In this document: in pieces, positions 7,632-27,916 of the stretch
Position numbering within the stretch: position 1 is the first letter of the stretch
Layout of the letters: each line of letters opens with the position of its first letter
IMG/VR virus record: IMGVR_UViG_3300044640_001495
Span: 62,001-126,000 of that record
DNA length: 64,000 bases
Strand: one strand, 5' to 3'
The notes under the pieces: generated by a model
What the model saw: the letters and a program-made list of their open reading frames with translations, nothing else
What the model was told of the DNA's origin: nothing
Database searches by the model: none
Position numbers and translations under genes: made by a program

Positions 7632-8183
7632 ATGTTAGATAAGATTTTATTCTGTCCCCTAGATATAGAATTAGATAATATAGAGTTTTCTGTAGTGGAC
7701 GGAACCCCCGTCATATCTAAATATAATCCTTATTGGAATTCTACTCTCATTTCTGATGAAACGATCAAAAAAAATAATTTTGATGAAGTTCTTAAACAAT
7801 TACCATTTGATAAGATTTCCAATTTACAATATAAAATACAACAACAGACCGTAGATTCTCACGTAGATGTTTATCCAGAAATGAAATTCGCTCCTGGAGA
7901 ATATAAACATATACTAGATACAGAACCGGCAGGGTATCGATTTATTGTAAAAGGAGCAGTTGATAGTTTAGAAGTTTTTGATGGTACATCGTGGATTACT
8001 ACTAGAGTTCCTAAAATTCCTTGTGCGTATATTTTAAATTCTACTTCTGCAATTCATAGAGTTAAAGAAGACAAACAACGAACAACGATCTATATAAGAG
8101 GTTGGTTAGATAAGGAACGACATCTAGAACTATTAGAAAAAAGCCTAGAAAAATATAGCCAATATGTTGTTTGGAAAAACTAG
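7632..8183 (+). CDS. Hypothetical protein, possible HxD...H dioxygenase fold
   Basis: SHVD ... SAIHRV ... RTTIY pattern. Confidence 0.5.
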   Translation: MLDKILFCPLDIELDNIEFSVVDGTPVISKYNPYWNSTLISDETIKKNNFDEVLKQLPFDKISNLQYKIQQQTVDSHVDVYPEMKFAPGEYKHILDTEPAGYRFIVKGAVDSLEVFDGTSWITTRVPKIPCAYILNSTSAIHRVKEDKQRTTIYIRGWLDKERHLELLEKSLEKYSQYVVWKN

Positions 8184-8884
8184 TGAGTATGTTGTAGACT
8201 AGAAATTACTTTGGCAACATTCTCTGTAGTCATAGCTACATTAAGTATAAGATGTAGACTGTTATCTACCCAACTAATAGTGCGATGTGTCATCCTTGTG
8301 TTGAGATAATAGACTCTGCCATGTTCTATCTGTAGTTTTCGATCATCCATCCACCAATCATAGTCCAATGGTCCACAATTGTTTAAGAACACAATTAAAC
8401 GGAAAACATCTCTAGGCATTGACGGATGGTCTCTATGGGGGACAAAATAACCCCCTGTATCCGACCGAATCAAAAATGTCCTGCCCAACTGATCCCACTC
8501 ATCTAAAAAAGGTCTAAGACTATGGCAGGTATCGTAGACTACAGTCTTTTGACTGAACTCCAACTCACTCAGCCGGCGTTTGGCTGCATATGATGCTTGT
8601 GCTAGACTAGGATTGGTTTTATGATCTGTGCCGGGCAAACATGTAAGGGTGAGAGATTTTCTGTTATTAGGCCTGTCTGTTCTAGGAAGATAGTCTTGCC
8701 AGTCGTCTTTAAACTGTGCAATCTCCTGCATAACTTGTCCGCAGTCTATCTTCCATTTTAGCGGTTCAAAAACTCCTAAGTTGAGTAGGCTGACTTCGTT
8801 AGTAAGATTCTCTAGGCTTACGTTATTAGGCGAATAAGATTGACTTCTTCCACTTACACCTGGGGGGACCACTATATTATTCAT
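8180..8884 (-). CDS. Aspartyl/asparaginyl beta-hydroxylase-like 2OG-Fe(II) enzyme
   Basis: GGYFVPHRDH, GRVYYLNTRMTH and LHLILNV motifs. Confidence 0.7.
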   Translation of the reverse strand: MNNIVVPPGVSGRSQSYSPNNVSLENLTNEVSLLNLGVFEPLKWKIDCGQVMQEIAQFKDDWQDYLPRTDRPNNRKSLTLTCLPGTDHKTNPSLAQASYAAKRRLSELEFSQKTVVYDTCHSLRPFLDEWDQLGRTFLIRSDTGGYFVPHRDHPSMPRDVFRLIVFLNNCGPLDYDWWMDDRKLQIEHGRVYYLNTRMTHRTISWVDNSLHLILNVAMTTENVAKVISSLQHTH

Positions 8885-8926
8885 TGACTAATCCTTAAAA
8901 ATTTTTCTAAAAGTTCTTGAAACATG

Positions 8927-9817
8927 TTATTTCGCCAATCTTCTTAGAAACTCACCAACAGGCATTTTCCATTTATCAGTATAAGGTTTATATGCTGATA
9001 AAAACTTCTGCTGTATTTGGTCACAACAATCTTGGATTAATTCGCATCCATGATATTTTTCCCTTATTTCTATATTCCAATTTTTTTGATAAATTCTATA
9101 TTTGGCATATCTAGAGTTTATAGTTTCACTTGGTGGAGATTGAAATAATTCCAACATAATAGGATCATAGCCAACTGATAACACAATTTCAGGAGTCATC
9201 TGAAAAAAATTAATAGCTGCTGTCATGTTGTTTGCTATGGCGTATCTACACCAAGATAAGATATATTCATATTCTACGTATTTCCATTCGCCATCTAATC
9301 TATTTGCATAAAAGTCACCATTCCCCAAAACAGGTATACCATTTAGGTTAAAATATACATGATCCATTAATTTCATTGTAGGCAACATTTCCGCTTGGAA
9401 ACATTTTCCTTGTTCTGCCATTCTTAGAGATTCCGGAGAACCTAACCAGGTTAGTACATCTATATCTACATAGATAACTTCAAAATTTAATTCTTTAGAT
9501 AATTTTTCAACCACTTCTATTTCGTGTAAGTTTAAATTTTTGTTAAATCTATTTGTTATAACCTTAAATGGTTGTCCTAATTCTAAGAAAGCTCTAACCA
9601 CAACTTCGCTATCAGCCCCTCCGCTTAACAACACATAAGGAAGTTTGTTCACAGTTTTTGAGTAATTGCTAATTATTTCACAGACATTGATACACTCATC
9701 TCTGAACGAGCTAGGAGTTCTAGTTGCTTTAGAGTACCAACATTGAAATGCGTCTGATTGGTGTTGTCTTAGATTGTACTGGTTTCCATTGTATCCAAAT
9801 CTAAAATTTTGATCCAT
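8927..9817 (-). CDS. PP-loop (adenine nucleotide alpha hydrolase / Asn-synthase-like) protein
   Basis: VLLSGGADSEVV PP-loop; start refined to MDQNF to avoid overlap with the desaturase. Confidence 0.65.
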   Translation of the reverse strand: MDQNFRFGYNGNQYNLRQHQSDAFQCWYSKATRTPSSFRDECINVCEIISNYSKTVNKLPYVLLSGGADSEVVVRAFLELGQPFKVITNRFNKNLNLHEIEVVEKLSKELNFEVIYVDIDVLTWLGSPESLRMAEQGKCFQAEMLPTMKLMDHVYFNLNGIPVLGNGDFYANRLDGEWKYVEYEYILSWCRYAIANNMTAAINFFQMTPEIVLSVGYDPIMLELFQSPPSETINSRYAKYRIYQKNWNIEIREKYHGCELIQDCCDQIQQKFLSAYKPYTDKWKMPVGEFLRRLAK

Positions 9818-9825
9818 CTCAAATT

Positions 9826-10593
9826 TTATTTTTTGACCGGATGAGCTAACAGAGTACATGCATCAAACTCCCATTTTTTTCCGCTTACAGATTTTCCAAA
9901 ATCAAAACTAGACGGCATTTGATGATGATTATTATGCCATCCGTTTCCCCAAAACATTAAGCCTAACATAGGGATATTTCTTGATTTATCTTTAGTTTCA
10001 AAATTTCTATATCCAACGTTGTCACTATGACAGAATGTATTAATAAGTCCCTCACCATGAAATGCAACAATTGTTGGCACAATAGCAAACCAATATAATA
10101 AATTTAAATCAATCAATCCCAGAACTATCCACGATAACAAAATAATTACTTCATAATACTTGGCTGTGAATGCCATTTTTTTATCACGTACTAGGTCAAC
10201 AGCAAACTTGTAGTTTACATTGGTAGGATCATGTTTTAAAATCCAACCCACAAAAGCATGCCATCTTCCAAAAATTGGAGAATGTTCGTCTTTTTCTGTA
10301 TCGGCAAATCTATGATGATATCCTCGGTGTACCGCGGCCCACCAGATTGGATGACCCTGGCATGATAACACACTGGCATAAATTATCAAATTCTCTGCCC
10401 ATGATTTTAAAATGATCGATCTATGAGATGCCCATCTATGAAGTCCTATTGCTACTCCGTACCCACCAATAAAAATATAGCCTGCTAGAAAATACAATAG
10501 ACTGGTAAAATTGTAATCTACGAAAAAAAACAACAAAACCAATAGTATGTGTAAAGGGAAAAACGTAGTTAACAGGTATTTGTAATTTTTCAT
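9826..10593 (-). CDS. Membrane fatty-acid (delta-9-type) desaturase
   Basis: His boxes HRWASH, HRGYHH and WHNNHH; hydrophobic segments; DPHSP-like DEHSP motif. Confidence 0.9.
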   Translation of the reverse strand: MKNYKYLLTTFFPLHILLVLLFFFVDYNFTSLLYFLAGYIFIGGYGVAIGLHRWASHRSIILKSWAENLIIYASVLSCQGHPIWWAAVHRGYHHRFADTEKDEHSPIFGRWHAFVGWILKHDPTNVNYKFAVDLVRDKKMAFTAKYYEVIILLSWIVLGLIDLNLLYWFAIVPTIVAFHGEGLINTFCHSDNVGYRNFETKDKSRNIPMLGLMFWGNGWHNNHHQMPSSFDFGKSVSGKKWEFDACTLLAHPVKK

Positions 10594-10623
10594 AGAGGGA
10601 TGATTCCGATTAAATATATTTAT

Positions 10624-11223
10624 ATGATGCCAAAATCCCTATCGCTTAAATCGAATCCCGGAGAGGACTTGTGGAATGAATGCATGGAAACTATAAAATC
10701 TCGGTGCTGTGCAGATCCATTGTATGAAAATTATGTAAATCTAACTCCTGCACAATATTATTATTTTGTGACAGCGATACACGAAAATAAGATTGTATCC
10801 TTTGGTGCCATAGAATATTCTCCTCACAAATGGGGAGAGAAAATTGCAAGAGTATTAACTAGATTTTGGATACATCCAGATTTTAGAAGCAACGGATTAA
10901 CCAAGTGGGGCCCTAGTGCTGTTAGATTTAGTCCAATTATACTTAACGCTCAGCTTGAATTTTTAAATTCACAGAATAAAATAAAAGTTGCTATGATCAC
11001 AAGAGAAGGAAAATACTCGAAAAGTTTTAAAGAAATAACAAAACTTGCATCGTCTGTTTCAGTTGATTCTTTTGAAATATTAGAAAATATATACAATGTC
11101 TGCGGAGACTCGAACGACGATTCGTGTTATCAAATGGTAGCACTGTCGTCAATAAGCCATGAAGACAAATGGAATGTCTTTTCCGAAGCAATATCTGCTG
11201 GATTCTTTAAAGGACCAAATTAA
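10624..11223 (+). CDS. GNAT-like acetyltransferase (putative)
   Basis: ARVLTRFWIHPDFRSNG resembles GNAT motif A. Confidence 0.5.
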   Translation: MMPKSLSLKSNPGEDLWNECMETIKSRCCADPLYENYVNLTPAQYYYFVTAIHENKIVSFGAIEYSPHKWGEKIARVLTRFWIHPDFRSNGLTKWGPSAVRFSPIILNAQLEFLNSQNKIKVAMITREGKYSKSFKEITKLASSVSVDSFEILENIYNVCGDSNDDSCYQMVALSSISHEDKWNVFSEAISAGFFKGPN

Positions 11224-12074
11224 TGAAGTTTTACGTAAAAGATTGTCCTGCGCACCTGTCATTGTTCCAGTGGATATACGAACAGAGCGATTTCTATACA
11301 GCAATAAATGATATTGCTACATCAACTAAAGTAGACGATATAATAGAATTGCCTCACAAAATTGATATTCCTTCACTTGTAAAAGATACCCTATCAGCAC
11401 TGGAAACGTTTGGAACCAAAGGTTGGCAAACAACCAAAGGTCAAAGTAAGGCCTACGGTGGTCTCAGCATGGTATACAACCCAGATCTAATAGACACAAT
11501 TGATCCTAATCAACATACACTAGGCACACCTGTAAACGCTCCGGATCAATTTTATTACGGCAGTACAGAAAATTTTCGTTCTACAAGAAATACATACTTT
11601 GACAGTTATGGATTTAGAAAACTATCACCATGCATCTCACAAACTAATCTTAAAAATTTTATCAGTGAATTTCGTCTTTCACCTACACGAAGTAGGATAG
11701 CTGTGTTAGATGCCGACATGCATGATAGGGTAGGTGAAGAATTCCTTTGGCACAAAGATGAAACTATATTCGAAAATCTCAGGATCAACATTCCTATCGA
11801 CACTGATTCTTCTTTTCTATTCCAACTCGAAAATAAGCTGCCGACTCATTTAGAGCTAGGAAAAATATATACTTGGGATACAAATTTACCACATAGGGTA
11901 TATGCCACAAAAAAATCTACTAAAAAAAGAACCCATTTAGTATTAGGATTCACGCCCTGGATTGATTATATAGAAAATGAAGATTGCTTTGTATTAAATT
12001 CCCACTTTGGTAAATTACATCCGTTTGATATTCTTCTAAACGGATCAGCACATCAAAGCATTGGTCAGGTATAA
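11223..12074 (+). CDS. AspH-like HxD...H dioxygenase (putative)
   Basis: LWHKDE, LRINIPI and YTWDTNLPHRV...RTHLVLG motifs. Confidence 0.6.
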   Translation: MKFYVKDCPAHLSLFQWIYEQSDFYTAINDIATSTKVDDIIELPHKIDIPSLVKDTLSALETFGTKGWQTTKGQSKAYGGLSMVYNPDLIDTIDPNQHTLGTPVNAPDQFYYGSTENFRSTRNTYFDSYGFRKLSPCISQTNLKNFISEFRLSPTRSRIAVLDADMHDRVGEEFLWHKDETIFENLRINIPIDTDSSFLFQLENKLPTHLELGKIYTWDTNLPHRVYATKKSTKKRTHLVLGFTPWIDYIENEDCFVLNSHFGKLHPFDILLNGSAHQSIGQV

Positions 12075-13306
12075 TTAACAATTATAGAAGAAATTAAATT
12101 TTGATATTTTTCGTTTAAATCGTTAAGATCACTACCTGATATATAAACATATCCGTTATTGCTAATTGCTAAATCGTTCCTTGGAAGATTAACTTTATTA
12201 TTAGTTGGTAATTTAATATAGTCTGCAAGAAAGTCTTTTTTAATCTCTATGCTTTTAATGAGACCCGGTTTTAATCCTAAATCTCTTTTCATACTACACT
12301 TGCTTTTGTTTAACAACATATTTTTATTTTTAAGAATAGAGTTAACTAACTTTGATGCATAGTGATTTTCTCCAGAGTATTGCAATAGATGGCATCCTAC
12401 GGAAACTCGAGCTGCAAAATCAATGAAATAAATATTTCCCTCTTTTAATATCACATCTAGCATGAACGGACAATTATCTAACTCAGTTAAAGAAATAAAC
12501 TTTTCTAATTTAATTTTGATATTTTCATAAAAATCGCTGTTAAAATATTTAGACGGATACACTAATGCTGTTTCAGCCGCATAGGGATATGAATTAGATT
12601 CTATATCATAAAAAAAATCTAAACTAAGAGATTTATTAAGTATGTGTCCAATCACAGAGATTATTGGTCCATCAATATATTCCTGAATTATGTAATCACT
12701 ATCTGCCGAATAATATTCAAAAGTTTTAAATTTTTCACCATGGCTTTCTTGATAATCGTGTACTTTAACATCGACGTCTTTAAAAAAATCTACAAGACTT
12801 TCTCTAGAAGAAATTATTTTTATCCCCAAACTTGCCATTCCCCCTGACGGTTTTACTAAACATGGAAATTTAATATCTGAAGATACAATGTTTAATGTTT
12901 TTTTATTTTTAACAATTTGATAAATTTTAGGAACATTGATCTTTAGATCTTTCCATATTTTGTAATAAACTATTTTTTCTTTAATTTTTTCGTATGATTT
13001 TAATTTAATTCCCGGTAGATCAAATTTACTGTTTATTTCAGCAATTAATTTCATATGATGATCGGGGAATGTAGGATAGATATATTGATATTTTTTTGTT
13101 TCTAATAATTGAGAAAGTAAATTTAAAAATTGATCGGTAGTATCAACAACAAATATGTTATCAAATTTAGATAGATGTGGCTTCATTAGATCAAATTCGG
13201 GATGATCTTTAGGAACAATTATATCTAAATTATAACCTTGATTTATTAAATCATAGATCGTAGATAAATGATGATATCCGCGACATAACAACAAAATATT
13301 ATTCAT
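12065..13306 (-). CDS. ATP-grasp ligase (L-amino-acid-ligase-like)
   Basis: FPCLVKPSGGMASLGI, YIIQEYIDGP and IYFIDFAAR motifs. Confidence 0.8.
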   Translation of the reverse strand: MNNILLLCRGYHHLSTIYDLINQGYNLDIIVPKDHPEFDLMKPHLSKFDNIFVVDTTDQFLNLLSQLLETKKYQYIYPTFPDHHMKLIAEINSKFDLPGIKLKSYEKIKEKIVYYKIWKDLKINVPKIYQIVKNKKTLNIVSSDIKFPCLVKPSGGMASLGIKIISSRESLVDFFKDVDVKVHDYQESHGEKFKTFEYYSADSDYIIQEYIDGPIISVIGHILNKSLSLDFFYDIESNSYPYAAETALVYPSKYFNSDFYENIKIKLEKFISLTELDNCPFMLDVILKEGNIYFIDFAARVSVGCHLLQYSGENHYASKLVNSILKNKNMLLNKSKCSMKRDLGLKPGLIKSIEIKKDFLADYIKLPTNNKVNLPRNDLAISNNGYVYISGSDLNDLNEKYQNLISSIIVNYT

Positions 13307-14474
13307 TTATTAATCTCACAAAATGCCACTTTGAAAATAAATGTTGATATCTTCCTCTTACTTTTCCAAAATCTCGTTGGCTTCTTTCCACTCCTAAATA
13401 CAATCTTTTATCTAATTGAGATAAAAATAGACTATTCATATCTAAAAAACTATCACGACATTTGGTTAATTCTGGATGCTCAAAAATCCAAAAATGTTTA
13501 TCTTCTCTGTCTGCAATATTTGGTTTATCAGCCTGAAAATTATTTGTCCAGTTATCATATAATACTTGCCTTGCTACAGAGTTTTGCATTCTAATAGATA
13601 ATAATGTAAAATCCAATGGCCAATCTTTACTTACATCTGAATAATAATATTGTCTTAAATGAAAATTATCATCAACATATGATGACAACTGATAGGCTTG
13701 TTCCATAGCTAATATTGGGAATTTTGGAGACCAATAAAAATATTCAGTTCCGTATCTATTTTCTTGTGAAGGAATTCCCATCCCTGTACCAGTGTCGGTA
13801 AAACTCATAAACCATTTATTATCTCTATAAGCTAACAACGGTTTATCTATTCCATAAATAGATCCAACTGTTTTACCCTTATTTAATTTGAGAAATTCCG
13901 ATTTACTATATGTCAGCATAAAAGGTATTTCTATATCATTCCATGTGTTAACATGATGCCATAAATCTTCTGTATAAATTTCAGGACTTAAATTATCTGT
14001 CCAATCTGCAATATTGATTTTAATCTGAGGATGATATTGTGACAGCCAATCAAGAACAGGTTTAATGGCAAAGTCCCATTCACTAAGAGTGTTCCTAGCC
14101 GAAGTGTCTAGTGTATTGGCCTTGTAAACTTGAGATTTTATAGCGGCCATTGGCCATTTCACACAAACTTCGTCTAATTTAATACCGTTGTCTATAAAGG
14201 ACCTAAGAACATTATAGCTGTCAGCGCCTCCCGAAAAATATAAAATTAGATAATCGTAGCTATCTCTAATCTGTTGAGCACGTTGTTGATAAAGTTTTTT
14301 GAGAGAAACTTTCCCCAACAAGGATCTATCAAAATTGTTCCAAATTTGATCAAAATATATGTAACTAACTTCCTGATTGGTGTCGGTAGCAAATACCAAT
14401 GCTTGAAATTTATTTTTAAATTTCGTAGCACCTACCTGCCAAAATCCTTCTACTTCTTGATTAAACATGTTCAT
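13299..14474 (-). CDS. PP-loop ATPase-like protein
   Basis: YDYLILYFSGGADSYNVL PP-loop; start refined. Confidence 0.65.
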   Translation of the reverse strand: MNMFNQEVEGFWQVGATKFKNKFQALVFATDTNQEVSYIYFDQIWNNFDRSLLGKVSLKKLYQQRAQQIRDSYDYLILYFSGGADSYNVLRSFIDNGIKLDEVCVKWPMAAIKSQVYKANTLDTSARNTLSEWDFAIKPVLDWLSQYHPQIKINIADWTDNLSPEIYTEDLWHHVNTWNDIEIPFMLTYSKSEFLKLNKGKTVGSIYGIDKPLLAYRDNKWFMSFTDTGTGMGIPSQENRYGTEYFYWSPKFPILAMEQAYQLSSYVDDNFHLRQYYYSDVSKDWPLDFTLLSIRMQNSVARQVLYDNWTNNFQADKPNIADREDKHFWIFEHPELTKCRDSFLDMNSLFLSQLDKRLYLGVERSQRDFGKVRGRYQHLFSKWHFVRLINE

Positions 14475-14524
14475 ATTTATAGACAAAAAAAATTATGGAA
14501 AATTAATATAATAAATACTTTACC

Positions 14525-15019
14525 ATGATATTACAGCCACTATATAAATTTATCAATTTCCAAACTTTACAGAAAGAAGTTTTGGAATTGGTAAAAAAAA
14601 TTAACGTTAACGACAATCAGCTAATATGTCAAGGATTAGAAAACGGTTCAAATGATTGGATCACAGGCATTGGTCGTATTGAAGAATTAGAAGAACAACA
14701 GGAACGAAATTATAAATTTATATATCCAGAGCTTCGTGGGACACTTCTAGAAAAATTTATTAAAGACCACAATGGTTTTAGAACTAGAATAATGTTAATG
14801 AATTCTAGAAAATGTTATTCTATCCATCGAGATCCAACCCCTAGATTGCATTTACCTATAATCACAAATGATCAGTGTTGGATGATATGGCCATATAAAA
14901 ATGAATGCCATCAGCTACATGAGGGAGTTGTGTATCGAGCAGATACAACACAAGATCACACTTTTATTAATGGATCTTTAGATCAAATTAGAATACACAT
15001 TGTAATGTGCATTGATTAA
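14525..15019 (+). CDS. AspH-like HxD...H dioxygenase (putative)
   Basis: YSIHRDP, RLHLPIITN and DTTQDHTFIN...RIHIV motifs. Confidence 0.7.
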   Translation: MILQPLYKFINFQTLQKEVLELVKKINVNDNQLICQGLENGSNDWITGIGRIEELEEQQERNYKFIYPELRGTLLEKFIKDHNGFRTRIMLMNSRKCYSIHRDPTPRLHLPIITNDQCWMIWPYKNECHQLHEGVVYRADTTQDHTFINGSLDQIRIHIVMCID

Positions 15020-15025
15020 TAATAT

Positions 15026-15601
15026 ATGAAAAATACTACAAATTACACCCAATTTAAATTTCCCTTCGATGACATCTTAAAGCCAGGCGTCATCTTAGAT
15101 GGAAGATTTTCAAGACATGATACCTGGGGTTTGGATTTCTTGCCTATAGATGAACTAGTGAAAGATGATGTATCGAAATTTTTTGAAGAAAAAGATCTTC
15201 CTTTAAAAAATATATATTTTATGTATGGTCCTGCGCAAGAATCTTTAGTTATTCATGTTGACGGATTTGTTGAAGAGAACGGAACCTTTCACGGAATTCA
15301 TTGCGGATTAAATTGGATTTATGGTTCTACAAATCATGTGATGAAATGGTATTCATCAGATACTGTTGGAGAAACATCTGTAAACAAAGAAGGACTCCGT
15401 AGAACAAGATGGTCAGCAAGTGACTGTGTATCTATTGAAGAATTAACCATCGCTGTACCAACTTTAGTGAGAACAGATATACCTCATAATGTAGTTAATT
15501 TTAGCAATGAAAAAAGATTCTGTGTAAGTTTAAGGTTCGCTGATATAACTTTGACATATCAGCAAGTTCGAGAAAAACTGCTAGATTATATTTTAATTTA
15601 A
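15026..15601 (+). CDS. Cupin/dioxygenase-like protein (putative)
   Basis: IHVDG ... RTDIPHNVVN ... RFCVSLRF. Confidence 0.55.
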   Translation: MKNTTNYTQFKFPFDDILKPGVILDGRFSRHDTWGLDFLPIDELVKDDVSKFFEEKDLPLKNIYFMYGPAQESLVIHVDGFVEENGTFHGIHCGLNWIYGSTNHVMKWYSSDTVGETSVNKEGLRRTRWSASDCVSIEELTIAVPTLVRTDIPHNVVNFSNEKRFCVSLRFADITLTYQQVREKLLDYILI

Positions 15602-15997: not shown

Positions 15998-16039
15998 ATT
16001 AGTTCCTCGTTTAAATACACTATTATTTATCTAAGAGAT

Positions 16040-19365: not shown

Positions 19366-19382
19366 ACCCTTATTTAATTAAA

Positions 19383-21635: not shown

Positions 21636-21636
21636 C

Positions 21637-22218: not shown

Positions 22219-22860
22219 TTATAAAGAAATTAAAAAATCATTATTTCTATATTGATTTTTCAAATAACCAATTCGATAAAGAAGATCTACATTCCAGGTT
22301 CTATTTCTCATCATTTGCCTATATCTTGGATGTGACGGCATTGTACCAGCAGGAATAATTGCCTCGTCAAAAAATTCATACCTATCTTTTATTATTGGTA
22401 TCTGTTGTCTCATTCTATTCCAGCGGTTGGTAGTTTTAGGATTAGCCACAATAAAATCATAGGAATAATATCCTATACTTTCTGCATGTGAAATGAGCAA
22501 TGTGCTGGTGTCAGCAATGCCATTATCCACAGCATTGAAAATAGAATTATTAGGACTACAAAGTATTATACATTGCCGCCAAGATTTGATCATATTCCAG
22601 AACTGACCAATAGCAATACATTTAATATTTTCTTCTTTGTCAAATACTAGAGCAATCTTATTTTTAGTTTGAGTTTCATTAGAAATCATTGTTTCGATAG
22701 ATTTGATAAAAACAGAGATATCAAAATCTTTATCATCAAAAGGATACGACCAAATTTTGGAAGTGTTCTGTTTATAATTTTTGGTGTCAACTAATAATTT
22801 TTCTAGATATACTAGATCATCTATAGTTCCAAACCTAGAGGAATATTCAGGATTTATCAT
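22219..22860 (-). CDS. Hypothetical protein (possible GNAT-like fold)
   Basis: 213-aa ORF; only weak pattern resemblance. Confidence 0.5.
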   Translation of the reverse strand: MINPEYSSRFGTIDDLVYLEKLLVDTKNYKQNTSKIWSYPFDDKDFDISVFIKSIETMISNETQTKNKIALVFDKEENIKCIAIGQFWNMIKSWRQCIILCSPNNSIFNAVDNGIADTSTLLISHAESIGYYSYDFIVANPKTTNRWNRMRQQIPIIKDRYEFFDEAIIPAGTMPSHPRYRQMMRNRTWNVDLLYRIGYLKNQYRNNDFLISL

Positions 22861-23782
22861 AGAAGTTGTGCGGCAACATTTCTGATTTTAGATATTTTGA
22901 AAAACAAAGTCTATTTTCTTTTATTCCACGATTGTATTCTTCGAATGACTCAGTAGAAGTTGCGAAAAAAACACACTTTGACATTTCTACTTTTAAAATT
23001 TCACAAAACTTTTCTTGTACTGCACGATATTTTTGATAATTGTAATCGGCAGTATATCGTTGTAATAGTTTTAATCCAACCGCAGCCGACAGTCTATTGA
23101 CGTATTTGTTTTTATTATAAACATATAAAGCATCATCATTGTCTTCTTTGGTTAGTCTCATGCCGATTCTAAGGTGTTGTACCGGAAAATTTTTACTAAG
23201 GCTGAATGTGATATCAGTAATACATTCATAAGAAAAATCAAAATTGATTCCGCCACAAACTCCAAAGTAGCAACAGTCGATTAACACTGGAACTTTTAGT
23301 GCTTCACAAGTTTCTAAAACCGAATCAGTCATTACATGTTCATTTCCGGTGCCAGCGAACGGAAGACTAAAAATCACCACGTCATTTTCTTGTATTGGTT
23401 CATCTTCAATACAGACACTCTGATCAAAATATAGCTTGGCAGCTATTGAATGATACATGTATTCGCCTCGAAAATACCTTAACCTACGATTACGATTTTT
23501 TAGATAAAATTTATCAAAAGCTTCTGTGGTTCCGTTTGAAAAAGCGAGGCCTTGGAATTTTTCCAAACCTATAACTTGATTAGAGGTGGTTTTCATTATC
23601 CATGCTTTATACTCTTTTGTAAATTTATCGTGTATTTCATCATCATTCATACAATCATTTTGCAGAACATCAACAATGATATCAGATACTTCTTGTTCTA
23701 AATCTTGATCTTTAATGCAATGTACACTGCCAAAAGGTAATTTTTTTAATTCTAGTAATTTATTCCAAGTATTGTTTTTCAT
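22847..23782 (-). CDS. PLP-dependent aminotransferase-like enzyme (fold type I)
   Basis: IDCCY and FSLSK..LRIG motifs; start refined to MKNNTW. Confidence 0.7.
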   Translation of the reverse strand: MKNNTWNKLLELKKLPFGSVHCIKDQDLEQEVSDIIVDVLQNDCMNDDEIHDKFTKEYKAWIMKTTSNQVIGLEKFQGLAFSNGTTEAFDKFYLKNRNRRLRYFRGEYMYHSIAAKLYFDQSVCIEDEPIQENDVVIFSLPFAGTGNEHVMTDSVLETCEALKVPVLIDCCYFGVCGGINFDFSYECITDITFSLSKNFPVQHLRIGMRLTKEDNDDALYVYNKNKYVNRLSAAVGLKLLQRYTADYNYQKYRAVQEKFCEILKVEMSKCVFFATSTESFEEYNRGIKENRLCFSKYLKSEMLPHNFYDKS

Positions 23783-23838
23783 GAAATATTTATCATAGCA
23801 CTTTATTGCATAAATATTTTCACTTACGGAGATGAGTA

Positions 23839-24741
23839 GTGATACAAAAATTTTTATTAGGACTGAGCATGATGTTTTTTTTATCTGCTCCCAGCCAAGC
23901 ATTCGACGCTGGTTCCCAACTCATTAAAGTGGTGATGCCATTTGCTCCAGGAGGCGGTGTTGATCAAACTTTTAGGCATTTTGAAAATTGGGCAGCGAAA
24001 AAAAACATTAAGTTTGTAGCAGTTTACAGACCAGGAGCCGAAGGATTGATTGGCATGAATGAAATTGCCGCAATGCCCAAAGACGGATATCATATTTCTT
24101 TTGCAACAGCCGGCACCATAGCCGTCCAAAGATTGAAAAATCCTCAAGCAGAATTAGAAACAGTGACGTTGATAAAAAATAGTATTATGGCGTTTGTCAC
24201 TCATAAAGATAGTGGCATACGGTCTCTAACTGATTTGTATCAAGGTAATCCAAAAACTCTAGCCTACGGCGCACCCGGACAACTAATGACTATACAGCAG
24301 TTAATAGAACTTTCAGATGGAAAAATGAAAAGTGCCACTCTTGTGCCCTACAAAGGTGGAGCTCCAGTAGTACAAGATATTGCAGGCAATCATGTGCAGT
24401 TTGCAGCAGTACCATTGTTGATCACAAAGAGTTTTGTTGATTCGGGAACCATCCGATTACTGGCTGTAGACAGCACAACTAGATTAGCAGAATATCCCAA
24501 CATTCCCACGTTTAAAGAAATCTTCCCTAAGTGGAAAAGTACTGACGGATTTGCCGTGGTATTGCCCAAGGGAACTGATACAAAAGCTGTAGAATTTTGG
24601 AATTCTATATTGAAAGAATATGTCACAGATCAAAAAGTACAAGCTGACTTTTTGAAAGACTACAATATGTCGCAAAAATTTGGTAAAGAAGAATTGGAAA
24701 AAACTGTTTCTAATGCAATTAACGCATTAGAAAAAAAATAA
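23839..24741 (+). CDS. Tripartite tricarboxylate transporter substrate-binding protein (Bug/TctC family)
   Basis: Signal peptide, VVMPFAPGGGVD, PGAEGLIG..., VPYKGGAPVVQDIAGNHV and IPTFKE motifs. Confidence 0.85.
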   Translation: MIQKFLLGLSMMFFLSAPSQAFDAGSQLIKVVMPFAPGGGVDQTFRHFENWAAKKNIKFVAVYRPGAEGLIGMNEIAAMPKDGYHISFATAGTIAVQRLKNPQAELETVTLIKNSIMAFVTHKDSGIRSLTDLYQGNPKTLAYGAPGQLMTIQQLIELSDGKMKSATLVPYKGGAPVVQDIAGNHVQFAAVPLLITKSFVDSGTIRLLAVDSTTRLAEYPNIPTFKEIFPKWKSTDGFAVVLPKGTDTKAVEFWNSILKEYVTDQKVQADFLKDYNMSQKFGKEELEKTVSNAINALEKK

Positions 24742-24771: not shown

Positions 24772-25536
24772 ATGAATATCAACCAATACATCGATAGGGT
24801 AAAATTTAAAACCCTACCACAAGATTTTAATCATCAAGATGGTAAGAACTATGAAAGCTCTTACGAATACACCAAGACCTTTAGCAACTATCATTTTGAT
24901 AAATTTAAACAGGAGCATGAGGGTGAATGGTATCATCGGCTGGGAAGATTCAAAGGAGATTGGGCAGACGATGTTGCTAAAATTATAGATAAATCAAAAT
25001 CATTATCCTGGGATCAAAGTACGGCGGCAGGTCAACGTCCGGGATTCCCTGGGGGTGTTAGTCCAATGAGAACACAAGAGCAAAACGACAGAAAGGCTCA
25101 CGGTTTAGACCATGTTGATCATACTAACTTAGTTTTAGAAGAATATCTAGATCAGTTTCCTAAAATTAAAAAAATGGTAGACCATTGGCATTTAGAAAAA
25201 GTTAGTTATCGTTGCCATGTGCAATGGCCTGGTCAGACGTTCGCCATGCACATTGATAAATTATGGCATCGCAATCCCACAGACCCGTCAAAAATAGTTA
25301 GGATTATTGTACATCTAGAAGATTACGAACCCGGCCAGATCCTTATATACGGTAATGCAGTACACACTCAGTGGAGAGCTGGCGATGTTCATATGTTCGA
25401 TACCTTGAATGTTCCGCATGGAACTTTTAATATTTCAAATAAACCAAGACCAAATATCACTATCACAGGATTGAGATCAGCCCTTACTGATCAAAGATTG
25501 CAAGAAGCTACTGCTGAATCAGAATATTGTATATAA
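24772..25536 (+). CDS. AspH-like HxD...H dioxygenase (putative)
   Basis: PGQTFAMHIDK ... WRAGDV...NVPHGTFN...R. Confidence 0.65.
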   Translation: MNINQYIDRVKFKTLPQDFNHQDGKNYESSYEYTKTFSNYHFDKFKQEHEGEWYHRLGRFKGDWADDVAKIIDKSKSLSWDQSTAAGQRPGFPGGVSPMRTQEQNDRKAHGLDHVDHTNLVLEEYLDQFPKIKKMVDHWHLEKVSYRCHVQWPGQTFAMHIDKLWHRNPTDPSKIVRIIVHLEDYEPGQILIYGNAVHTQWRAGDVHMFDTLNVPHGTFNISNKPRPNITITGLRSALTDQRLQEATAESEYCI

Positions 25537-25574: not shown

Positions 25575-26315
25575 ATGAATAAAAACTTTGTTATTGTTGG
25601 GACTCCTCGTAGCGGCACTACGTTTGTCTGCGATGTGCTGAACGAATTTGATGATATTTGGATTCCAGAGTTTCCTAATTACGAACCGTTTAATCCGCAT
25701 AACTTACACAGATTAGCTAACTCGATGAAAAATAATTCATTCGATCAAGATTTAATCATTAAAAAATTTATTAGTGTAAAATCAAAGAAAAATGTAGATT
25801 ATTTTGGTTTTAAAACTTTCTTGTCCTTTCACTCAGATTTAAAAAATTTAATTAAAGATAATAATCTAGATGTGATCTTAATTTTAAGAAAAGATATTTG
25901 GAAAGTCATAGGAAGTATGCTGATCGCAATAGACCATAATGACTACATAGGTAGCTCTAAAAAACATGATCCGTTTATTTTTGTTGAATCCAAAAGAGAA
26001 GTAAGAAGAATAATGACATTTTTCAATCAACTTTGTAGAACATATTGGGAACTAGAGAATTTATTTGCTAAAGATTCTAATATTATCGAAAAACTATATT
26101 TTGAAGATATTGTAAATAATAACATTGCAAACAATTTAGACACTTATTTTAACAAAAAAATTATTTTTGATCATAATTATAACGACACCGACGATATCAA
26201 TTCTTATATTGGAAATTTTGAAGAACTGCAAAGTTTAATTATAAAAGAAGTTAAAAAAAATCACACACATTATTCAGCCCTTCCTTCATATATTGTTAAT
26301 CAATTAGTGTTATGA
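25575..26315 (+). CDS. Sulfotransferase (Stf0-like)
   Basis: IVGTPRSGTT 5'-PAPS-binding loop; ILILRKD 3'-PB-like motif. Confidence 0.8.
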   Translation: MNKNFVIVGTPRSGTTFVCDVLNEFDDIWIPEFPNYEPFNPHNLHRLANSMKNNSFDQDLIIKKFISVKSKKNVDYFGFKTFLSFHSDLKNLIKDNNLDVILILRKDIWKVIGSMLIAIDHNDYIGSSKKHDPFIFVESKREVRRIMTFFNQLCRTYWELENLFAKDSNIIEKLYFEDIVNNNIANNLDTYFNKKIIFDHNYNDTDDINSYIGNFEELQSLIIKEVKKNHTHYSALPSYIVNQLVL

Positions 26316-26686
26316 TACTACAAAAAGTTATATTCGAAGAAAAAAATAGAAATGGCACAAGTGTGGATGATTTTTATTATCGAGGATTAGAAGAAAAACT
26401 CCAAGGAAAAAAAGGCACAGGAGTTAGAGCGTTAGCAGCTGATTTTATCAGACAGGGCAGAATCCTAGATAGATTTTTAATCTTAGATGAAACAGGATGT
26501 AAATTAGAAATTTATACTTTTTTTAAAGATGAAGAATCATTTTCTGAATTTATTAATCATCCTGTAAATCAAAATGCAAAAAAGTTTTGGCAAGATCGAG
26601 ATTGGCAAAGAACTGCCACAAAAACTGTAATTGCTGATTTTTTGAACGTGAGAAACAGACTCGGACAACTTAAATCTATAATCTAA
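26312..26686 (+). CDS. Hypothetical protein
   Basis: 124-aa ORF translationally coupled to the sulfotransferase. Confidence 0.65.
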   Translation: MILQKVIFEEKNRNGTSVDDFYYRGLEEKLQGKKGTGVRALAADFIRQGRILDRFLILDETGCKLEIYTFFKDEESFSEFINHPVNQNAKKFWQDRDWQRTATKTVIADFLNVRNRLGQLKSII

Positions 26687-27125
26687 TTGATCGATTTGTT
26701 TTAAAGACCCAATCCCAAAAAGGTGTTCCGATACCATAATTGCATCTACTTTCTGTATGATGCAAATAATGCCATTGACCAGATGTGTACCAAGGATACA
26801 AATTGAATTTTCTATTGTGTTCTAGCCTTTCTTGTATAATGGCTGCATAAACATAAAATAAAATAATTATCCACCATTGACCGGTGATCCAGCTGAAAAT
26901 AAAAGTAGGTAGAACTTCAGTTATCCAATAATCAAACGTGCTAGGCCAATTGTCATTGAACAGAAAAATGTTATTCCAATGCCAAACTATCTTGTGTTTT
27001 TTAATATAAGCGTGATGATGAAAATGTAGTTTTGACAGAAATGAAATTTTATGACTGGCTCGGTGTATCCAGTATATCATAAAAGTCCATAGAAAGAAAT
27101 AAAATATTATTTCAATACCGATCAT
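26676..27125 (-). CDS. Fatty-acid hydroxylase / sterol desaturase family protein
   Basis: His boxes HRASH, HFHHH and HYLHH; NYG...WDWVFKT C-terminus. Confidence 0.85.
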   Translation of the reverse strand: MIGIEIIFYFFLWTFMIYWIHRASHKISFLSKLHFHHHAYIKKHKIVWHWNNIFLFNDNWPSTFDYWITEVLPTFIFSWITGQWWIIILFYVYAAIIQERLEHNRKFNLYPWYTSGQWHYLHHTESRCNYGIGTPFWDWVFKTNRSIRL

Positions 27126-27916
27126 ACTAGACCTAGATTTTTCCGAATTTTAGTAGCACTGATGTCAGTAATAGATTCATCAAACGTTTCCTCACCACTG
27201 GTATATCCTACACCACGACCCCAGCCAATATGAACAATATTTGGGACAACTTGAATTTCGTATTGCCCTTGATAAAGCATATCTAAATCACGTTTGATAA
27301 ATCCTTTAACTTTGTCAACTTCGAAAGGATTACTACCTTGCCATCCTTGTACATCACGTACTTGGATGATGACCTGTCCAGTCTTGGCCAGTAATCTTTC
27401 AAAGAGTGCTCGATGACCTGCATGCCATGGTTGCCATCTGCCTAACATCTGAACAGTTTCTTTTTTCCAGTCAAACACAGGACGACGACGATTGTCTATA
27501 ATGTGTGCGGCAATAAACTCCCCCCATTTTTCTCCATCTTGTTCTGTAATCCTAAAGTCGTAAATCTCTGGCGGAATAAAGGCTTTGTTAGTATCTTCAA
27601 ACCGACCTTTGTCAATTGTATCTACCCAGATAGTCCAATCTGCTTTAAAGTTGTTACGCATCTCAACTAGAGGAGCAACAAAGTCACAGATGACGTAATC
27701 AACATCAGTCATTGCATCTGCTAATTCGCGCATACGATGACTTTGACGAATACGACCTTCGTTGCTAAAATCCCAGTCGTTATACTTTTTACGCACATCG
27801 TCAGCATTTAACCAACCTACACGTTTTTTATCTGCTTGTAAATGGTCAACAATATGTTGTGCCAAATATGTTTTACCTGAACCAGGTAGGCCCATAACTA
27901 AAATACGTTTGTTCAT
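27122..27916 (-). CDS. cysC: Adenylylsulfate kinase fused to an HxGH nucleotidyltransferase domain
   Basis: GLPGSGKT P-loop, NADDVR and FSNEGR APS-kinase-like motifs; C-terminal GRWQPWHAGH and ISATKIR. Confidence 0.75.
   Translation of the reverse strand: MNKRILVMGLPGSGKTYLAQHIVDHLQADKKRVGWLNADDVRKKYNDWDFSNEGRIRQSHRMRELADAMTDVDYVICDFVAPLVEMRNNFKADWTIWVDTIDKGRFEDTNKAFIPPEIYDFRITEQDGEKWGEFIAAHIIDNRRRPVFDWKKETVQMLGRWQPWHAGHRALFERLLAKTGQVIIQVRDVQGWQGSNPFEVDKVKGFIKRDLDMLYQGQYEIQVVPNIVHIGWGRGVGYTSGEETFDESITDISATKIRKNLGLV

What the first reader, a model, noticed from the sequence alone, without database searches (positions are those of the whole stretch)
7632..27916. 20-kb phage-borne biosynthetic-type enzyme island
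Seen: 26 tightly packed genes, almost all tailoring enzymes: about 9 HxD...H dioxygenase-type proteins including a TauD, 3 delta-9-type desaturases, a fatty-acid hydroxylase, 2 PP-loop ATPases, an ATP-grasp ligase, a radical SAM and a B12-type radical SAM enzyme, a PLP enzyme, 1-2 GNATs, a sulfotransferase, an APS kinase fusion and a Bug/TctC protein. It is visibly more AT-rich than the structural genes (spot counts: 11/60 GC in the line at 12901 versus 38/60 at 45181; these are extremes, not averages). It is bounded by a fibre gene and a tRNA-like gene. No PKS, NRPS or obvious precursor peptide is seen. Inference: a coherent pathway that acylates, desaturates, hydroxylates, methylates and sulfates a product, such as a modified lipid or lipopeptide, or a heavily decorated virion surface. 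This is my best candidate for an undescribed system.
Basis: partly seen in the sequence, partly recalled or inferred. Interest (0 to 1): 0.87.

Follow-up and report, generated by a model that had tools for sequence, protein, structure and literature searches.

The report
Hypervariable enzyme island of a freshwater jumbo phage
The 20-kb stretch is a real, intact, AT-rich accessory region of a large uncultured phage. It is built from several small enzyme cassettes that are shuffled, gained and lost independently, not one biosynthetic pathway, although a few cassettes are conserved, phage-only and undescribed.

Summary
There are 26 back-to-back ORFs at 7632-27916, with 33.8% GC against 42.6% in the rest of the window. 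The PLP enzyme, sulfotransferase and APS-kinase-like fusion are supported by motifs. Only 4-5 of the "about 9" dioxygenases could be verified.

The window is part of a 353-kb T4-related jumbo phage known only from metagenomes. Five independent assemblies carry the island with the same flanks, and its genes are under purifying selection (dN/dS 0.02-0.16 for 21 of the 22 genes with an ortholog; g11 is 0.40).

The "one coherent pathway" reading is not supported:
- The genes switch strand 11 times, giving 12 strand blocks.
- Variants at 96% identity differ by whole cassettes, including a clean deletion of the B12-rSAM pair.
- In about 30 related phage loci only 10-12 of the 26 families recur, in scrambled order.

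Adjacency is conserved only within small modules:
- a secreted TctC plus a phage-specific AspH-like 2OG oxygenase;
- a PP-loop ATPase plus an aminotransferase-like protein;
- a B12-rSAM plus an oxygenase;
- a PP-loop ATPase, desaturase and GNAT-like protein.

This matches the hypervariable auxiliary-gene regions already described in aquatic T4-like phages. What is new is the set of conserved, uncharacterised, phage-only cassettes.

The parts
5807..7591 (+). Left boundary: fibre-like or receptor-binding protein (594 aa)
   Evidence: Pfam Mtd_N E 5.6e-7; weak PHROG tail-fibre hit
7632..8183 (+). g01, unknown (183 aa)
   Evidence: No Pfam or NCBIfam hit. The oxygenase call is not supported by hhalign. 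Homolog in L050. dN/dS 0.16
8180..8884 (-). g02, possible AspH-like cupin (234 aa)
   Evidence: hhalign against the Asp_Arg_Hydrox-like family gives prob 32%, E 4.7e-4, with HRD...H aligned. Homologs in L028, L046 and L050
8927..9859 (-). g03, PP-loop ATPase (module B)
   Evidence: SGGADS at residue 79. Pfam QueC N-terminal region E 1.2e-5; 12 of 14 family members hit QueC. Homologous to the g08 family (hhalign 95%)
9826..10593 (-). g04, delta-9-type membrane desaturase (module B)
   Evidence: Pfam FA_desaturase 56 bits; NCBIfam DesA family; His boxes and TM segments
10600..11223 (+). g05, GNAT-like protein (module B)
   Evidence: Acetyltransf_1 at 20.0 bits against a cut-off of 20.7. Conserved next to the desaturase and PP-loop genes in L008, L009, L012 and L025
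11223..12074 (+). g06, AspH-like 2OG oxygenase
   Evidence: hhalign prob 92.5%, E 4.9e-7; Pfam Asp_Arg_Hydrox E 0.03
12065..13306 (-). g07, ATP-grasp ligase (specific to this phage lineage)
   Evidence: Pfam ATP-grasp_4 at 36 bits; PDB 4dim E 4e-8; absent from all other loci
13299..14486 (-). g08, PP-loop ATPase of a phage-only family (module A)
   Evidence: SGGADS at residue 85; family of more than 456 unnamed proteins. AF2 pLDDT 92; Foldseek matches LarE and carbapenam synthetase over the PP-loop core only. Full-length matches only to uncultured phage proteins. dN/dS 0.04
14525..15019 (+). g09, Asp/Asn beta-hydroxylase-family 2OG oxygenase
   Evidence: Pfam PF05118 at 24.8 bits against a cut-off of 22.6
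15026..15601 (+). g10, unknown; HxD...H+10R motif only
15602..15997 (-). g11, unknown (131 aa)
   Evidence: No hits; dN/dS 0.40
16040..16963 (+). g12, radical SAM enzyme (MoaA/TrsS/Tes-like core)
   Evidence: Pfam Radical_SAM 63 bits; CxxxCxxC at residue 34
16965..17795 (-). g13, TauD/TfdA-family dioxygenase
   Evidence: Pfam TauD 191 bits. Closest solved structure is RdpA at 1e-46, ahead of TauD at 4e-35 and AtsK
17792..18553 (-). g14, delta-9-type desaturase
18553..19365 (-). g15, delta-9-type desaturase
19335..20195 (+). g16, unknown; probably starts at the ATG at 19383
   Evidence: No family hit; start inferred
20199..21635 (+). g17, class-B (B12-type) radical SAM enzyme (module C)
   Evidence: Pfam Radical_SAM 54 bits. 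Best NCBIfam hits are B12-rSAM methyltransferase families, all below their cut-offs. Deleted together with g18 in L023 and L024
21637..22218 (+). g18, probable AspH-like 2OG oxygenase, partner of g17 (module C)
   Evidence: Invariant H81, D83, H141 and R151. hhalign 63% and 33%. Adjacent to g17 in 7 of 9 loci
22219..22860 (-). g19, unknown (213 aa)
   Evidence: No hits
22847..23782 (-). g20, class I/II aminotransferase-like PLP protein (module A), 311 aa
   Evidence: Motifs. Family of more than 806 proteins, a few with PF00155. Start at 23782. Adjacent to g08 in other loci
23839..24741 (+). g21, secreted TctC/Bug-type solute-binding protein (module A)
   Evidence: Pfam TctC 96 bits; PDB BugE, AdpC and terephthalate-binding protein; Sec-type signal peptide in all homologs
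24772..25536 (+). g22, phage-specific AspH/P4H-like 2OG oxygenase (module A)
   Evidence: Invariant H160, D162, H216 and R226. AF2 pLDDT 93; Foldseek AspH and P4H at E 7e-7. hhalign 94%. TctC lies immediately upstream in 12 of 18 loci
25575..26315 (+). g23, sulfotransferase-like protein
   Evidence: PRSGTT PAPS loop; Pfam Sulfotransfer_1 and Sulfotransfer_3 at E 2e-4; found with g24 only in L047
26312..26686 (+). g24, unknown (124 aa)
   Evidence: No hits; co-occurs with g23 in L047
26676..27125 (-). g25, membrane fatty-acid-hydroxylase-superfamily protein
   Evidence: Pfam FA_hydroxylase 51 bits; His boxes and TM segments
27122..27916 (-). g26, APS-kinase-like P-loop kinase fused to an NMNAT-like nucleotidyltransferase
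   Evidence: Pfam APS_kinase 44 bits on residues 5-92; CTP_transf_like and NMNAT hits on residues 154-225; motifs
28033..28143 (+). Right boundary: tRNA-like cloverleaf, not recognised by the tools
28904..29452 (+). 2OG-Fe(II) oxygenase just outside the stated island
   Evidence: Pfam 2OG-FeII_Oxy_3 at 31 bits; replaced in L023
29466..30128 (+). ThyX, the conserved block that anchors the island in related phages
   Evidence: NCBIfam thyX 158 bits; synteny in L044, L047, L050, L051 and L052

Best explanation
The stretch is the hypervariable accessory region of a roughly 353-kb T4-related jumbo myovirus, probably from fresh water and infecting a Gram-negative host. It lies between a fibre-like gene and the conserved ThyX block. 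It is not one operon or pathway. It is a mosaic of small auxiliary-enzyme cassettes drawn from an AT-rich gene pool shared by related phages, and the cassettes are gained, lost and reordered independently.

**Cassettes whose internal adjacency is conserved, and which are therefore probably functionally coupled**
- (A) A signal-peptide-bearing TctC/Bug solute-binding protein is followed by a phage-specific AspH-like 2OG oxygenase (g21-g22). In several phages this pair is joined to a B12-type radical SAM plus a second AspH-like oxygenase (g17-g18) and to a PP-loop ATPase plus an aminotransferase-like PLP protein (g08, g20).
- (B) A PP-loop ATPase, a delta-9-type membrane desaturase and a GNAT-like protein (g03-g05).

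The remaining genes are extra desaturases, a fatty-acid hydroxylase and additions specific to this phage lineage: a TauD/RdpA-family dioxygenase, a second rSAM, an ATP-grasp enzyme, a sulfotransferase and an APS-kinase-like fusion.

**Inferred mode of action (none of this is shown)**
- During infection the exported binding protein captures an organic carboxylate in the host periplasm and hands it to the host's own TctAB permease.
- The cytosolic oxygenase, aminotransferase, amidoligase and methylase set then converts that carboxylate.
- The desaturases and hydroxylase remodel host membrane acyl chains, as shown experimentally for cyanophage delta-9 desaturases.
- The sulfur-related enzymes act separately.
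For: **Phage identity**
- The clamp loader is 55% identical to that of Pseudomonas phage PA5oct, and the structural proteins match T4-type baseplate and fibre PHROGs.
- The window is 100% identical to a 353-kb IMG/VR contig.

**The island is real and functional**
- The same junctions appear in five assemblies.
- dN/dS is 0.02-0.16 with no frameshifts.

**Mosaic structure**
- The genes lie in 12 strand blocks, while the flanks are all on the + strand.
- Variants at 96% identity lack exactly g17-g18, keeping the first 11 nt of g17, and carry three other cassette-sized differences.
- Across 30 distinct related loci only g03, g04/14/15, g05, g08, g09, g17, g18, g20, g21 and g22 recur widely, in different orders and orientations. 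g02, g10, g25 and the g23-g24 pair recur in one to three loci.

**Conserved adjacency**
- TctC-g22 in 12 of 18 loci.
- g17-g18 in 7 of 9 loci.
- g08-g20 in 5 of 7 loci.
- GNAT-like with PP-loop ATPase or desaturase in 3-4 of 4 loci.
- A compact six-gene arrangement in L009, L029 and L039.

**Shared gene pool**
- The island lies next to the g27-ThyX-g30-g31 block in several phages.
- These families are AT-rich in those phages as well.

**TctC is exported**
- Sec-type signal peptides are present in all homologs.
- No TctA or TctB was seen on any phage locus.

**Precedent in the literature**
- Hypervariable regions beside tail fibres in aquatic T4-like phages, with radical SAM cassette indels between close relatives (PMC7029224).
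- AspH, TauD, acyl carrier protein and many 2OG oxygenases in cyanomyoviruses (PMC3037559).
- Cyanophage delta-9 desaturases shown to be active (PMC5776448).
Against: - The same roughly ten families recur together in many phages. That could mean a dispersed pathway rather than shared ancestry.
- No substrate is known for any of the enzymes.
- The metabolic-conversion model for cassette A rests only on family-level chemistry.
- AspH/P4H-type oxygenases often act on proteins or lipid A rather than on free metabolites.
- The related loci were found using island genes as probes, so co-occurrence frequencies are biased upward.
- Only about 10 kb on each side of each probe gene was examined.
Confidence: 0.55

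Rival explanations
1. This is the first reader's reading: all 26 genes form one biosynthetic pathway. The pathway builds a heavily tailored lipid or lipopeptide, or a decorated virion surface, that is acylated, desaturated, hydroxylated, methylated and sulfated.
For: - The enzyme types are those of tailoring steps.
- Four membrane di-iron lipid enzymes are present.
- Related loci add an acyl carrier protein, an AMP-ligase, a ketoreductase and a carbamoyltransferase.
- All genes are under purifying selection.
Against: - There is no scaffold enzyme or precursor, and no gap above 42 nt.
- The sulfation genes, TauD, the ATP-grasp enzyme and g12 are absent from nearly all related loci.
- g17-g18 is dispensable in a 96%-identical variant.
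- Gene order is scrambled and the genes lie in 12 strand blocks.
- The TctC protein is periplasmic.
Confidence: 0.12
2. The island is a toolkit that modifies macromolecules rather than small molecules. In this reading the AspH/P4H-like hydroxylases, GNAT-like protein, ATP-grasp enzyme, radical SAM enzymes and PP-loop ATPases post-translationally or post-transcriptionally modify host or phage proteins, ribosomes or tRNAs.
For: - The best structural matches of g22 are the protein hydroxylases AspH and the EF-Tu prolyl hydroxylase.
- The island adjoins a cluster of 8 tRNA genes and a tRNA-like element.
- The PP-loop families hit QueC, MnmA and TilS-type models weakly.
- A related locus carries ribosomal protein S21.
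Against: - The secreted TctC and the membrane desaturases do not fit this reading.
- The matches are at fold level only.
- No target protein or RNA has been identified.
Confidence: 0.15
3. The island carries out nucleotide or DNA hypermodification, using the PP-loop, radical SAM, aminotransferase and oxygenase genes next to the nucleotide-metabolism genes.
For: - The island abuts ThyX.
- Related loci carry dCMP deaminase and GTP cyclohydrolase I nearby.
- g03 hits the QueC N-terminal region.
Against: - No DpdA/TGT, QueD or QueE equivalog was seen.
- The QueC match covers only the generic PP-loop (residues 76-141).
- The oxygenases are AspH-like, not TET/JBP-like.
- The desaturases and TctC remain unexplained.
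Confidence: 0.07
4. The island is an assembly chimera with cellular DNA.
For: Lower GC than the flanks.
Against: - The sequence and both junctions are identical in three metagenome assemblies, and about 96% identical in two more.
- The core families are absent from 185,579 species genomes apart from MAG contigs under 2 kb.
- The same families are AT-rich in other phage contigs.
Confidence: 0.01

Closest known systems
Hypervariable ('hyperplastic' / host-recognition-cluster) regions of aquatic T4-like myoviruses (cyanomyophages and pelagimyophages; PMC3037559, PMC7029224)
   Same: - It lies between conserved modules and next to a fibre-like gene.
- It has little synteny between relatives.
- Close relatives differ by whole cassettes, including radical SAM cassettes.
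- Its content matches: AspH-type and other 2OG oxygenases, TauD, desaturase, radical SAM and transport-related genes.
   Different: - The host phage is a roughly 353-kb jumbo phage whose replication genes are closest to PA5oct-like phages, not a cyanophage or pelagiphage.
- No glycosyltransferases or photosynthesis genes are present.
- It is dominated by phage-only PP-loop, aminotransferase-like and AspH-like families that have not been described.
Cyanophage delta-9 lipid desaturases (vFAD; PMC5776448)
   Same: - Membrane FA_desaturase family with delta-9-type His boxes.
- Carried by an aquatic myovirus as an auxiliary gene.
   Different: - There are three divergent paralogs (about 32% identity) plus a fatty-acid-hydroxylase-superfamily protein in one phage.
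- One desaturase sits in a conserved cassette with a PP-loop ATPase and a GNAT-like protein.
- Activity and regiospecificity have not been tested.
Phage-encoded periplasmic solute-binding proteins used as auxiliary genes (for example cyanophage PstS, listed in PMC3037559)
   Same: A secreted binding protein with no permease genes of its own, presumably plugging into the host transporter.
   Different: - It belongs to the TctC/Bug (tripartite tricarboxylate) family.
- It is tightly coupled to a cytosolic 2OG oxygenase.
- The literature search found no earlier description of this pairing.
Tailoring-enzyme sets of complex carbapenem (thienamycin-type) and RiPP clusters (from my own knowledge; a resemblance only)
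   Same: The combination of a PP-loop amide- or lactam-forming enzyme, 2OG oxygenases, B12-radical SAM methylases and a GNAT. Carbapenam synthetase is among the Foldseek hits of g08.
   Different: - There is no crotonase-type CarB and no precursor peptide.
- g08 lacks the N-terminal domain of beta-lactam synthetases.
- The match is limited to the PP-loop core.

Membership tests
Single biosynthetic gene cluster | A scaffold-forming enzyme or precursor (PKS, NRPS, terpene synthase, precursor peptide) | tested here: not met
   No such Pfam or NCBIfam domain in any of the 26 ORFs. The largest intergenic gap is 42 nt
Single biosynthetic gene cluster | The gene set is inherited as a unit across relatives | tested here: not met
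   Only 10-12 of the 26 families recur, in scrambled order. Variants at 96% identity differ by cassettes
Hypervariable accessory region of aquatic T4-like phages | Lies between conserved modules and differs by cassettes between close relatives | tested here: met
   It lies between the fibre-like gene and the ThyX block. g17-g18 is deleted and three further indels occur in L023 and L024
Hypervariable accessory region of aquatic T4-like phages | Composition differs from the core genes; content is auxiliary-type enzymes | tested here: met
   GC is 33.8% against 42.6%, and the same trend holds in related phages. Families as
TctC/Bug solute-binding protein of tripartite tricarboxylate transporters | Family domain above the curated threshold, plus a signal peptide | tested here: met
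   PF03401 at 96 bits against a cut-off of 27; PDB Bug, AdpC and terephthalate-binding protein hits; signal peptides
TctC/Bug solute-binding protein of tripartite tricarboxylate transporters | Works with TctA/TctB membrane subunits | not testable with these tools
   No TctA or TctB on the phage loci examined. The host is unknown
2OG/Fe(II) oxygenase (AspH/P4H-like DSBH) | DSBH fold with an HxD...H triad and a 2OG-binding Arg | tested here: met
   - g22: Foldseek AspH and P4H at E 7e-7; invariant H160, D162, H216 and R226.
- g09: Pfam above its cut-off.
- g06: hhalign 92%.
- g18: 63%.
- g02 and g10: weak. g01 and g16: not supported
Delta-9 acyl-lipid/acyl-CoA desaturase | Three His boxes (HRxxxH, HRxHH, HNxHH) in a membrane protein | tested here: met
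   g04, g14 and g15. Regiospecificity not testable
PP-loop ATP pyrophosphatase | SGGxDS motif in a Rossmann-like alpha-hydrolase fold | tested here: met
   g03 and g08. The g08 model matches the LarE PP-loop core. Neither reaches the cut-off of any named equivalog (QueC, LarE, AsnB, TilS)
Class B (B12-binding) radical SAM methyltransferase | CxxxCxxC radical SAM core plus an N-terminal B12-binding domain | tested here: inconclusive
   - g17 has the core.
- Its best NCBIfam hits are B12-rSAM families (PhpK 74 bits against a cut-off of 600).
- A homolog carries a weak PF02310 hit.
- No B12 domain reaches threshold in g17 itself
PAPS-dependent sulfation module (APS kinase + sulfotransferase) | An APS kinase equivalog and a sulfotransferase with PAPS-binding loops | tested here: inconclusive
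   - g26: APS_kinase Pfam 44 bits, but NCBIfam 41 bits against a cut-off of 127. The P-loop, DxxR and F-V-A-P motifs are present.
- g23: has the PRSGTT loop but only sub-threshold Pfam hits.
- The two genes are not adjacent and are not co-conserved elsewhere
RiPP cluster | A precursor peptide gene next to the maturases | tested here: not met
   No free small ORF. The coding fraction is about 100%

The most novel reading that the evidence does not exclude
The conserved phage-only gene set forms a previously undescribed virus-encoded pathway. The set comprises a secreted TctC, two AspH-like 2OG oxygenases, a B12-radical SAM, an aminotransferase-like PLP protein and one or more PP-loop ATPases. 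In this reading the pathway captures a specific extracellular carboxylate through the host permease and turns it into a modified amino-acid-like metabolite, or uses it to modify a macromolecule, during infection. The protein families involved have hundreds of members in aquatic metagenomes, no Pfam model and no cellular counterparts.
Probability: 0.25. Interest if true: 0.75.

Novelty: new variant of a known kind. Interest (0 to 1): 0.48.

Why it matters
Large aquatic phages carry many oxygenase, radical SAM and PP-loop genes of unknown function, and these are usually listed one by one as 'auxiliary metabolic genes'. This analysis shows which of them are physically coupled across divergent phages and which are incidental neighbours:
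- TctC with a specific 2OG oxygenase;
- a PP-loop ATPase with an aminotransferase-like protein;
- a B12-rSAM with an oxygenase;
- a PP-loop ATPase with a desaturase and a GNAT-like protein.

That reduces a 26-gene puzzle to four small units that can be tested experimentally. The families are abundant (more than 800, more than 450 and 122 clusters for g20, g08 and g22), lack Pfam models and appear restricted to phages. Solving one cassette would therefore annotate many metagenomic genes. A phage-exported TctC would also add a new class to the known cases of phages hijacking host nutrient uptake.

Tried and rejected
- **GenBank phage searches.** Megablast of the island and of the structural region against 50,697 GenBank phage records gave no match. 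tblastn of g08 and g17 also gave nothing. g22 gave one weak hit to a cyanophage oxygenase, and TctC gave only spurious hits.
- **PDB sequence searches.** Single-sequence or profile searches for g08, g18, g22 and g20 gave nothing.
- **Family scans.** NCBIfam and lenient Pfam scans of the unassigned ORFs gave no usable hit for g01, g10, g11, g16, g19 or g24.
- **Profile comparisons.** hhalign of g01 and g16 against the oxygenase families gave no support. The HxD...H+10R regex is too unspecific to decide, because 10-40% of shuffled sequences match it.
- **Promoter and terminator scan.** Counts equal the shuffled expectation, so the scan is uninformative.
- **tRNA-like element.** Neither ARAGORN nor Rfam, even at E<=1, recognises it. 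Its fold z-score is only -1.7.
- **Cellular genomes.** Scans for g22 and g08 found nothing except MAG fragments under 2 kb.
- **Literature.** Searches found no description of a phage TctC-oxygenase cassette or of these PP-loop families.
- **Rejected readings.**
  - 7-deazaguanine pathway: only the generic PP-loop matches QueC.
  - Lasso, graspetide or other RiPP cluster: there is no precursor gene.
  - Chimera: the junctions are replicated in independent assemblies.

Full report
**1. What is there**

The window carries a T4-type replication and structural backbone. Its clamp loader is 55% identical to that of Pseudomonas jumbo phage PA5oct, and its large structural proteins match baseplate-wedge and tail-fibre PHROGs. 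It is 100% identical to IMG/VR contig 3300044640_001495, which is 353 kb long. No GenBank phage is similar at the nucleotide level.

Between 7632 and 27916 lie 26 ORFs with essentially no non-coding DNA; the largest gap is 42 nt. Island GC is 33.8% against 42.6% elsewhere. Unlike the flanks, where every gene is on the + strand, the island genes lie in 12 blocks of alternating strand.

**2. Gene families**

Confirmed above curated thresholds:
- Three FA_desaturase paralogs (g04, g14, g15), about 32% identical to one another, with the delta-9 His boxes HRxxxH, HRxHH and HNNHH and with TM segments.
- FA_hydroxylase g25.
- ATP-grasp g07.
- Radical SAM enzymes g12 and g17. The best NCBIfam relatives of g17 are B12-binding methyltransferase families, all far below their cut-offs.
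- TauD-family g13. Its nearest solved relative is the aryloxyalkanoate dioxygenase RdpA, not TauD itself.
- Asp_Arg_Hydrox g09.
- TctC g21.

PP-loop ATPases:
- g03 and g08 both carry SGGADS.
- g08 belongs to a family of more than 456 unnamed metagenomic proteins with no Pfam model.
- A confident AlphaFold model of g08 (pLDDT 92) matches LarE and carbapenam synthetase only over the PP-loop core. It matches only uncharacterised proteins of uncultured phages over its full length.
- The g03 and g08 families are homologous beyond the PP-loop (hhalign 95%).

Other assignments:
- g20 is 311 aa and starts at 23782. It has the class I/II aminotransferase motifs, and a few of its more than 806 homologs carry PF00155.
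- g22 belongs to a tight family of 122 clusters with no Pfam model. It has invariant H160, D162, H216 and R226. Its model (pLDDT 93) matches AspH and prolyl hydroxylases at E about 7e-7, and its profile matches the Asp_Arg_Hydrox-like family at 94%.
- g06 is AspH-like (92%).
- g18 is probably AspH-like (63% and 33%, with the triad aligned and R at +10).
- g02 and g10 have weak support. g01 and g16 have none.
- g23 has the PRSGTT PAPS loop but only sub-threshold Pfam hits.
- g26 is an APS-kinase-like P-loop kinase fused to an NMNAT-like nucleotidyltransferase with GRWQPWHAGH and ISATKIR motifs.
- g05 is GNAT-like, just under threshold.
- g11, g19 and g24 remain unknown.

**3. The island is real and functional**

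- The island and both junctions are identical in three assemblies from different metagenomes. They are about 96% identical in two further assemblies.
- Against the 96% variant, 21 of the 22 genes with an ortholog have dN/dS of 0.02-0.16; g11 is 0.40. Apart from one alignment gap in g26, there are no indels, and no frameshifts.
- The g22 and g08 families are absent from one genome of each of 185,579 prokaryotic species, apart from MAG fragments under 2 kb.
- A chimera with cellular DNA is therefore excluded for practical purposes.

**4. One pathway or many cassettes**

Using g17, g13, g08 and g22 as probes I collected 33 distinct related loci, 30 of useful size, each with about 10 kb on either side of the probe gene. 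Three results bear on the question.

(a) Only some families recur.
- Widely recurrent: PP-loop a (17 loci), TctC (17), PP-loop b (13), desaturase (13), AspH-like g09 (10), g18 (9), PLP g20 (7) and GNAT-like (4).
- Found in one to three loci: FA hydroxylase, g02, g10 and the g23-g24 pair.
- Never seen outside the window's own lineage: g06, g07 (ATP-grasp), g11, g12, g13 (TauD), g19 and g26.

(b) Order and orientation differ from locus to locus, but certain pairs stay adjacent.
- TctC lies immediately upstream of g22 in 12 of 18 loci.
- g18 lies next to g17 in 7 of 9 loci.
- g08 overlaps g20 in 5 of 7 loci.
- The PP-loop, desaturase and GNAT-like genes stay together in 3-4 of 4 loci.
- In L009, L029 and L039 six genes form one compact block: TctC, g22, g18 and g17, convergent with g20 and g08.
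- In the window, g08 is separated from g20 by about 8.4 kb of other genes.

(c) Close relatives differ by cassettes.
- L023 and L024 lack exactly window 20214-22214 (g17-g18) and keep the first 11 nt of g17, which indicates a deletion.
- They also have an insertion of about 540 bp between g02 and g03, a 266-bp insertion near g25/g26, and a replaced g28.

By the usual logic of gene-neighbourhood analysis, coupling is supported within the small modules and not between them. The island lies next to the conserved g27-ThyX-g30-g31 block in several of these phages. The island families are AT-rich there too: 32-39% GC, below the adjacent ThyX block (40-45%) in five of the six loci that carry both. 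The island therefore draws on a shared accessory gene pool at a conserved genomic position.

**5. How it most likely works**

Shown:
- All phage TctC homologs have Sec-type signal peptides, so they are periplasmic and the host has two membranes.
- No TctA or TctB is encoded nearby.
- g22 has no signal peptide.

Inferred:
- The binding protein captures a carboxylate and delivers it to the host permease. Its closest solved relatives bind glutamate, adipate, terephthalate or aspartate. The N-terminal PFAPGGGVD loop resembles the Bug carboxylate-binding motif; this point rests on my own knowledge.
- The cytosolic 2OG oxygenase or oxygenases, the aminotransferase-like protein, the PP-loop (adenylating or amidating) enzyme and the B12-rSAM then transform that carboxylate.
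- The desaturases and the hydroxylase act on host membrane acyl chains. The experimental precedent is the cyanophage delta-9 desaturases (PMC5776448).
- The TauD/RdpA-like enzyme, the sulfotransferase and the APS-kinase-like fusion are separate, lineage-specific additions.

Three rival readings cannot be excluded and are scored in the rivals section: a single dispersed pathway, a protein/tRNA/ribosome modification toolkit, and DNA hypermodification.

**6. Comparison with what is known**

- Hypervariable regions beside tail-fibre genes are described for pelagimyophages and cyanomyophages. They have low synteny, carry auxiliary genes, and show radical SAM cassette indels between close relatives (PMC7029224).
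- Cyanomyoviruses carry many 2OG-Fe(II) oxygenases. Some also carry asparaginyl beta-hydroxylases, taurine dioxygenase, an acyl carrier protein and its synthase (PMC3037559).
- The island is therefore a member of a known kind of region.
- I found no description of the conserved TctC-oxygenase pair, of the PP-loop/aminotransferase pair, or of the phage-only PP-loop clade. I searched the literature and GenBank phage records. Hence the rating 'new variant of a known kind'.

**7. Verdict**

- The interpretation as one coherent pathway is not supported.
- The best reading is a mosaic auxiliary-gene island containing a few conserved, uncharacterised cassettes that deserve experimental work.
- Interest is moderate: 0.48.

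Noticed in passing
window 28033-28143 (+): A cloverleaf-like element with a canonical GGUUCGAAACC T-loop, an anticodon-like loop CUCAUAG (CAU) and an extra arm of about 35 nt. Neither ARAGORN nor Rfam calls it, even at E<=1, and its fold z-score is only -1.7.
   Followed up: partly
window 33-4330: Eight tRNA genes (Ala, Thr x2, Met, Pro, Gly x2, Arg) are interleaved with ORFs, two of which are 2OG-FeII_Oxy_5 proteins (213-830 and 3528-4100). Oxygenase genes are therefore not confined to the island.
   Followed up: partly
window 36349-37197 (+): A DAHP_synth_1 family protein (241 bits) of KdsA-like size (282 aa). It may be a phage-encoded KDO-8-phosphate synthase, which would point to host envelope sugar metabolism.
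   Followed up: no
window 27122-27916 (-): An unusual fusion: an APS-kinase-like P-loop kinase (GLPGSGKT, LNADDVR, DFVAP) joined to an NMNAT-like nucleotidyltransferase (GRWQPWHAGH ... ISATKIR). It could be a minimal PAPS-synthase-like enzyme or an NAD-salvage enzyme.
   Followed up: partly
window 10593-10600, 14486-14525, 15997-16040, 19365-19383, 23782-23839: Divergently transcribed gene pairs are separated by only 6-56 nt, so promoters must lie inside neighbouring coding sequences. The sigma-70 and terminator scans showed no enrichment over shuffles.
   Followed up: partly
L026, L029, L030, L025 (whole loci): Related phage loci carry further secondary-metabolism-type genes next to the shared cassettes: an acyl carrier protein, ACPS, an AMP-ligase, a ketoreductase, BKACE, a carbamoyltransferase, a UDP-glucose-dehydrogenase-like protein, a DctP-type binding protein without a signal peptide, Rieske and FAD monooxygenases, Amidohydro_2, GTP cyclohydrolase I, dCMP deaminase and ribosomal protein S21.
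   Followed up: no
L023 18867-19407 and 2405-2672: The 96%-identical variant carries an extra segment of about 540 bp between g02 and g03 and a 266-bp insertion near the g25/g26 junction. Its g28 region is also replaced by shorter, unrelated DNA.
   Followed up: partly
window 28207-28395 (+): A small, very basic, Ala/Lys-rich 62-aa ORF just after the tRNA-like element. It was not searched.
   Followed up: no
window 41384-48745 (+): A 2453-aa protein with several tail-fibre and baseplate-connector PHROG matches, followed by three further structural proteins of 820-895 aa.
   Followed up: no
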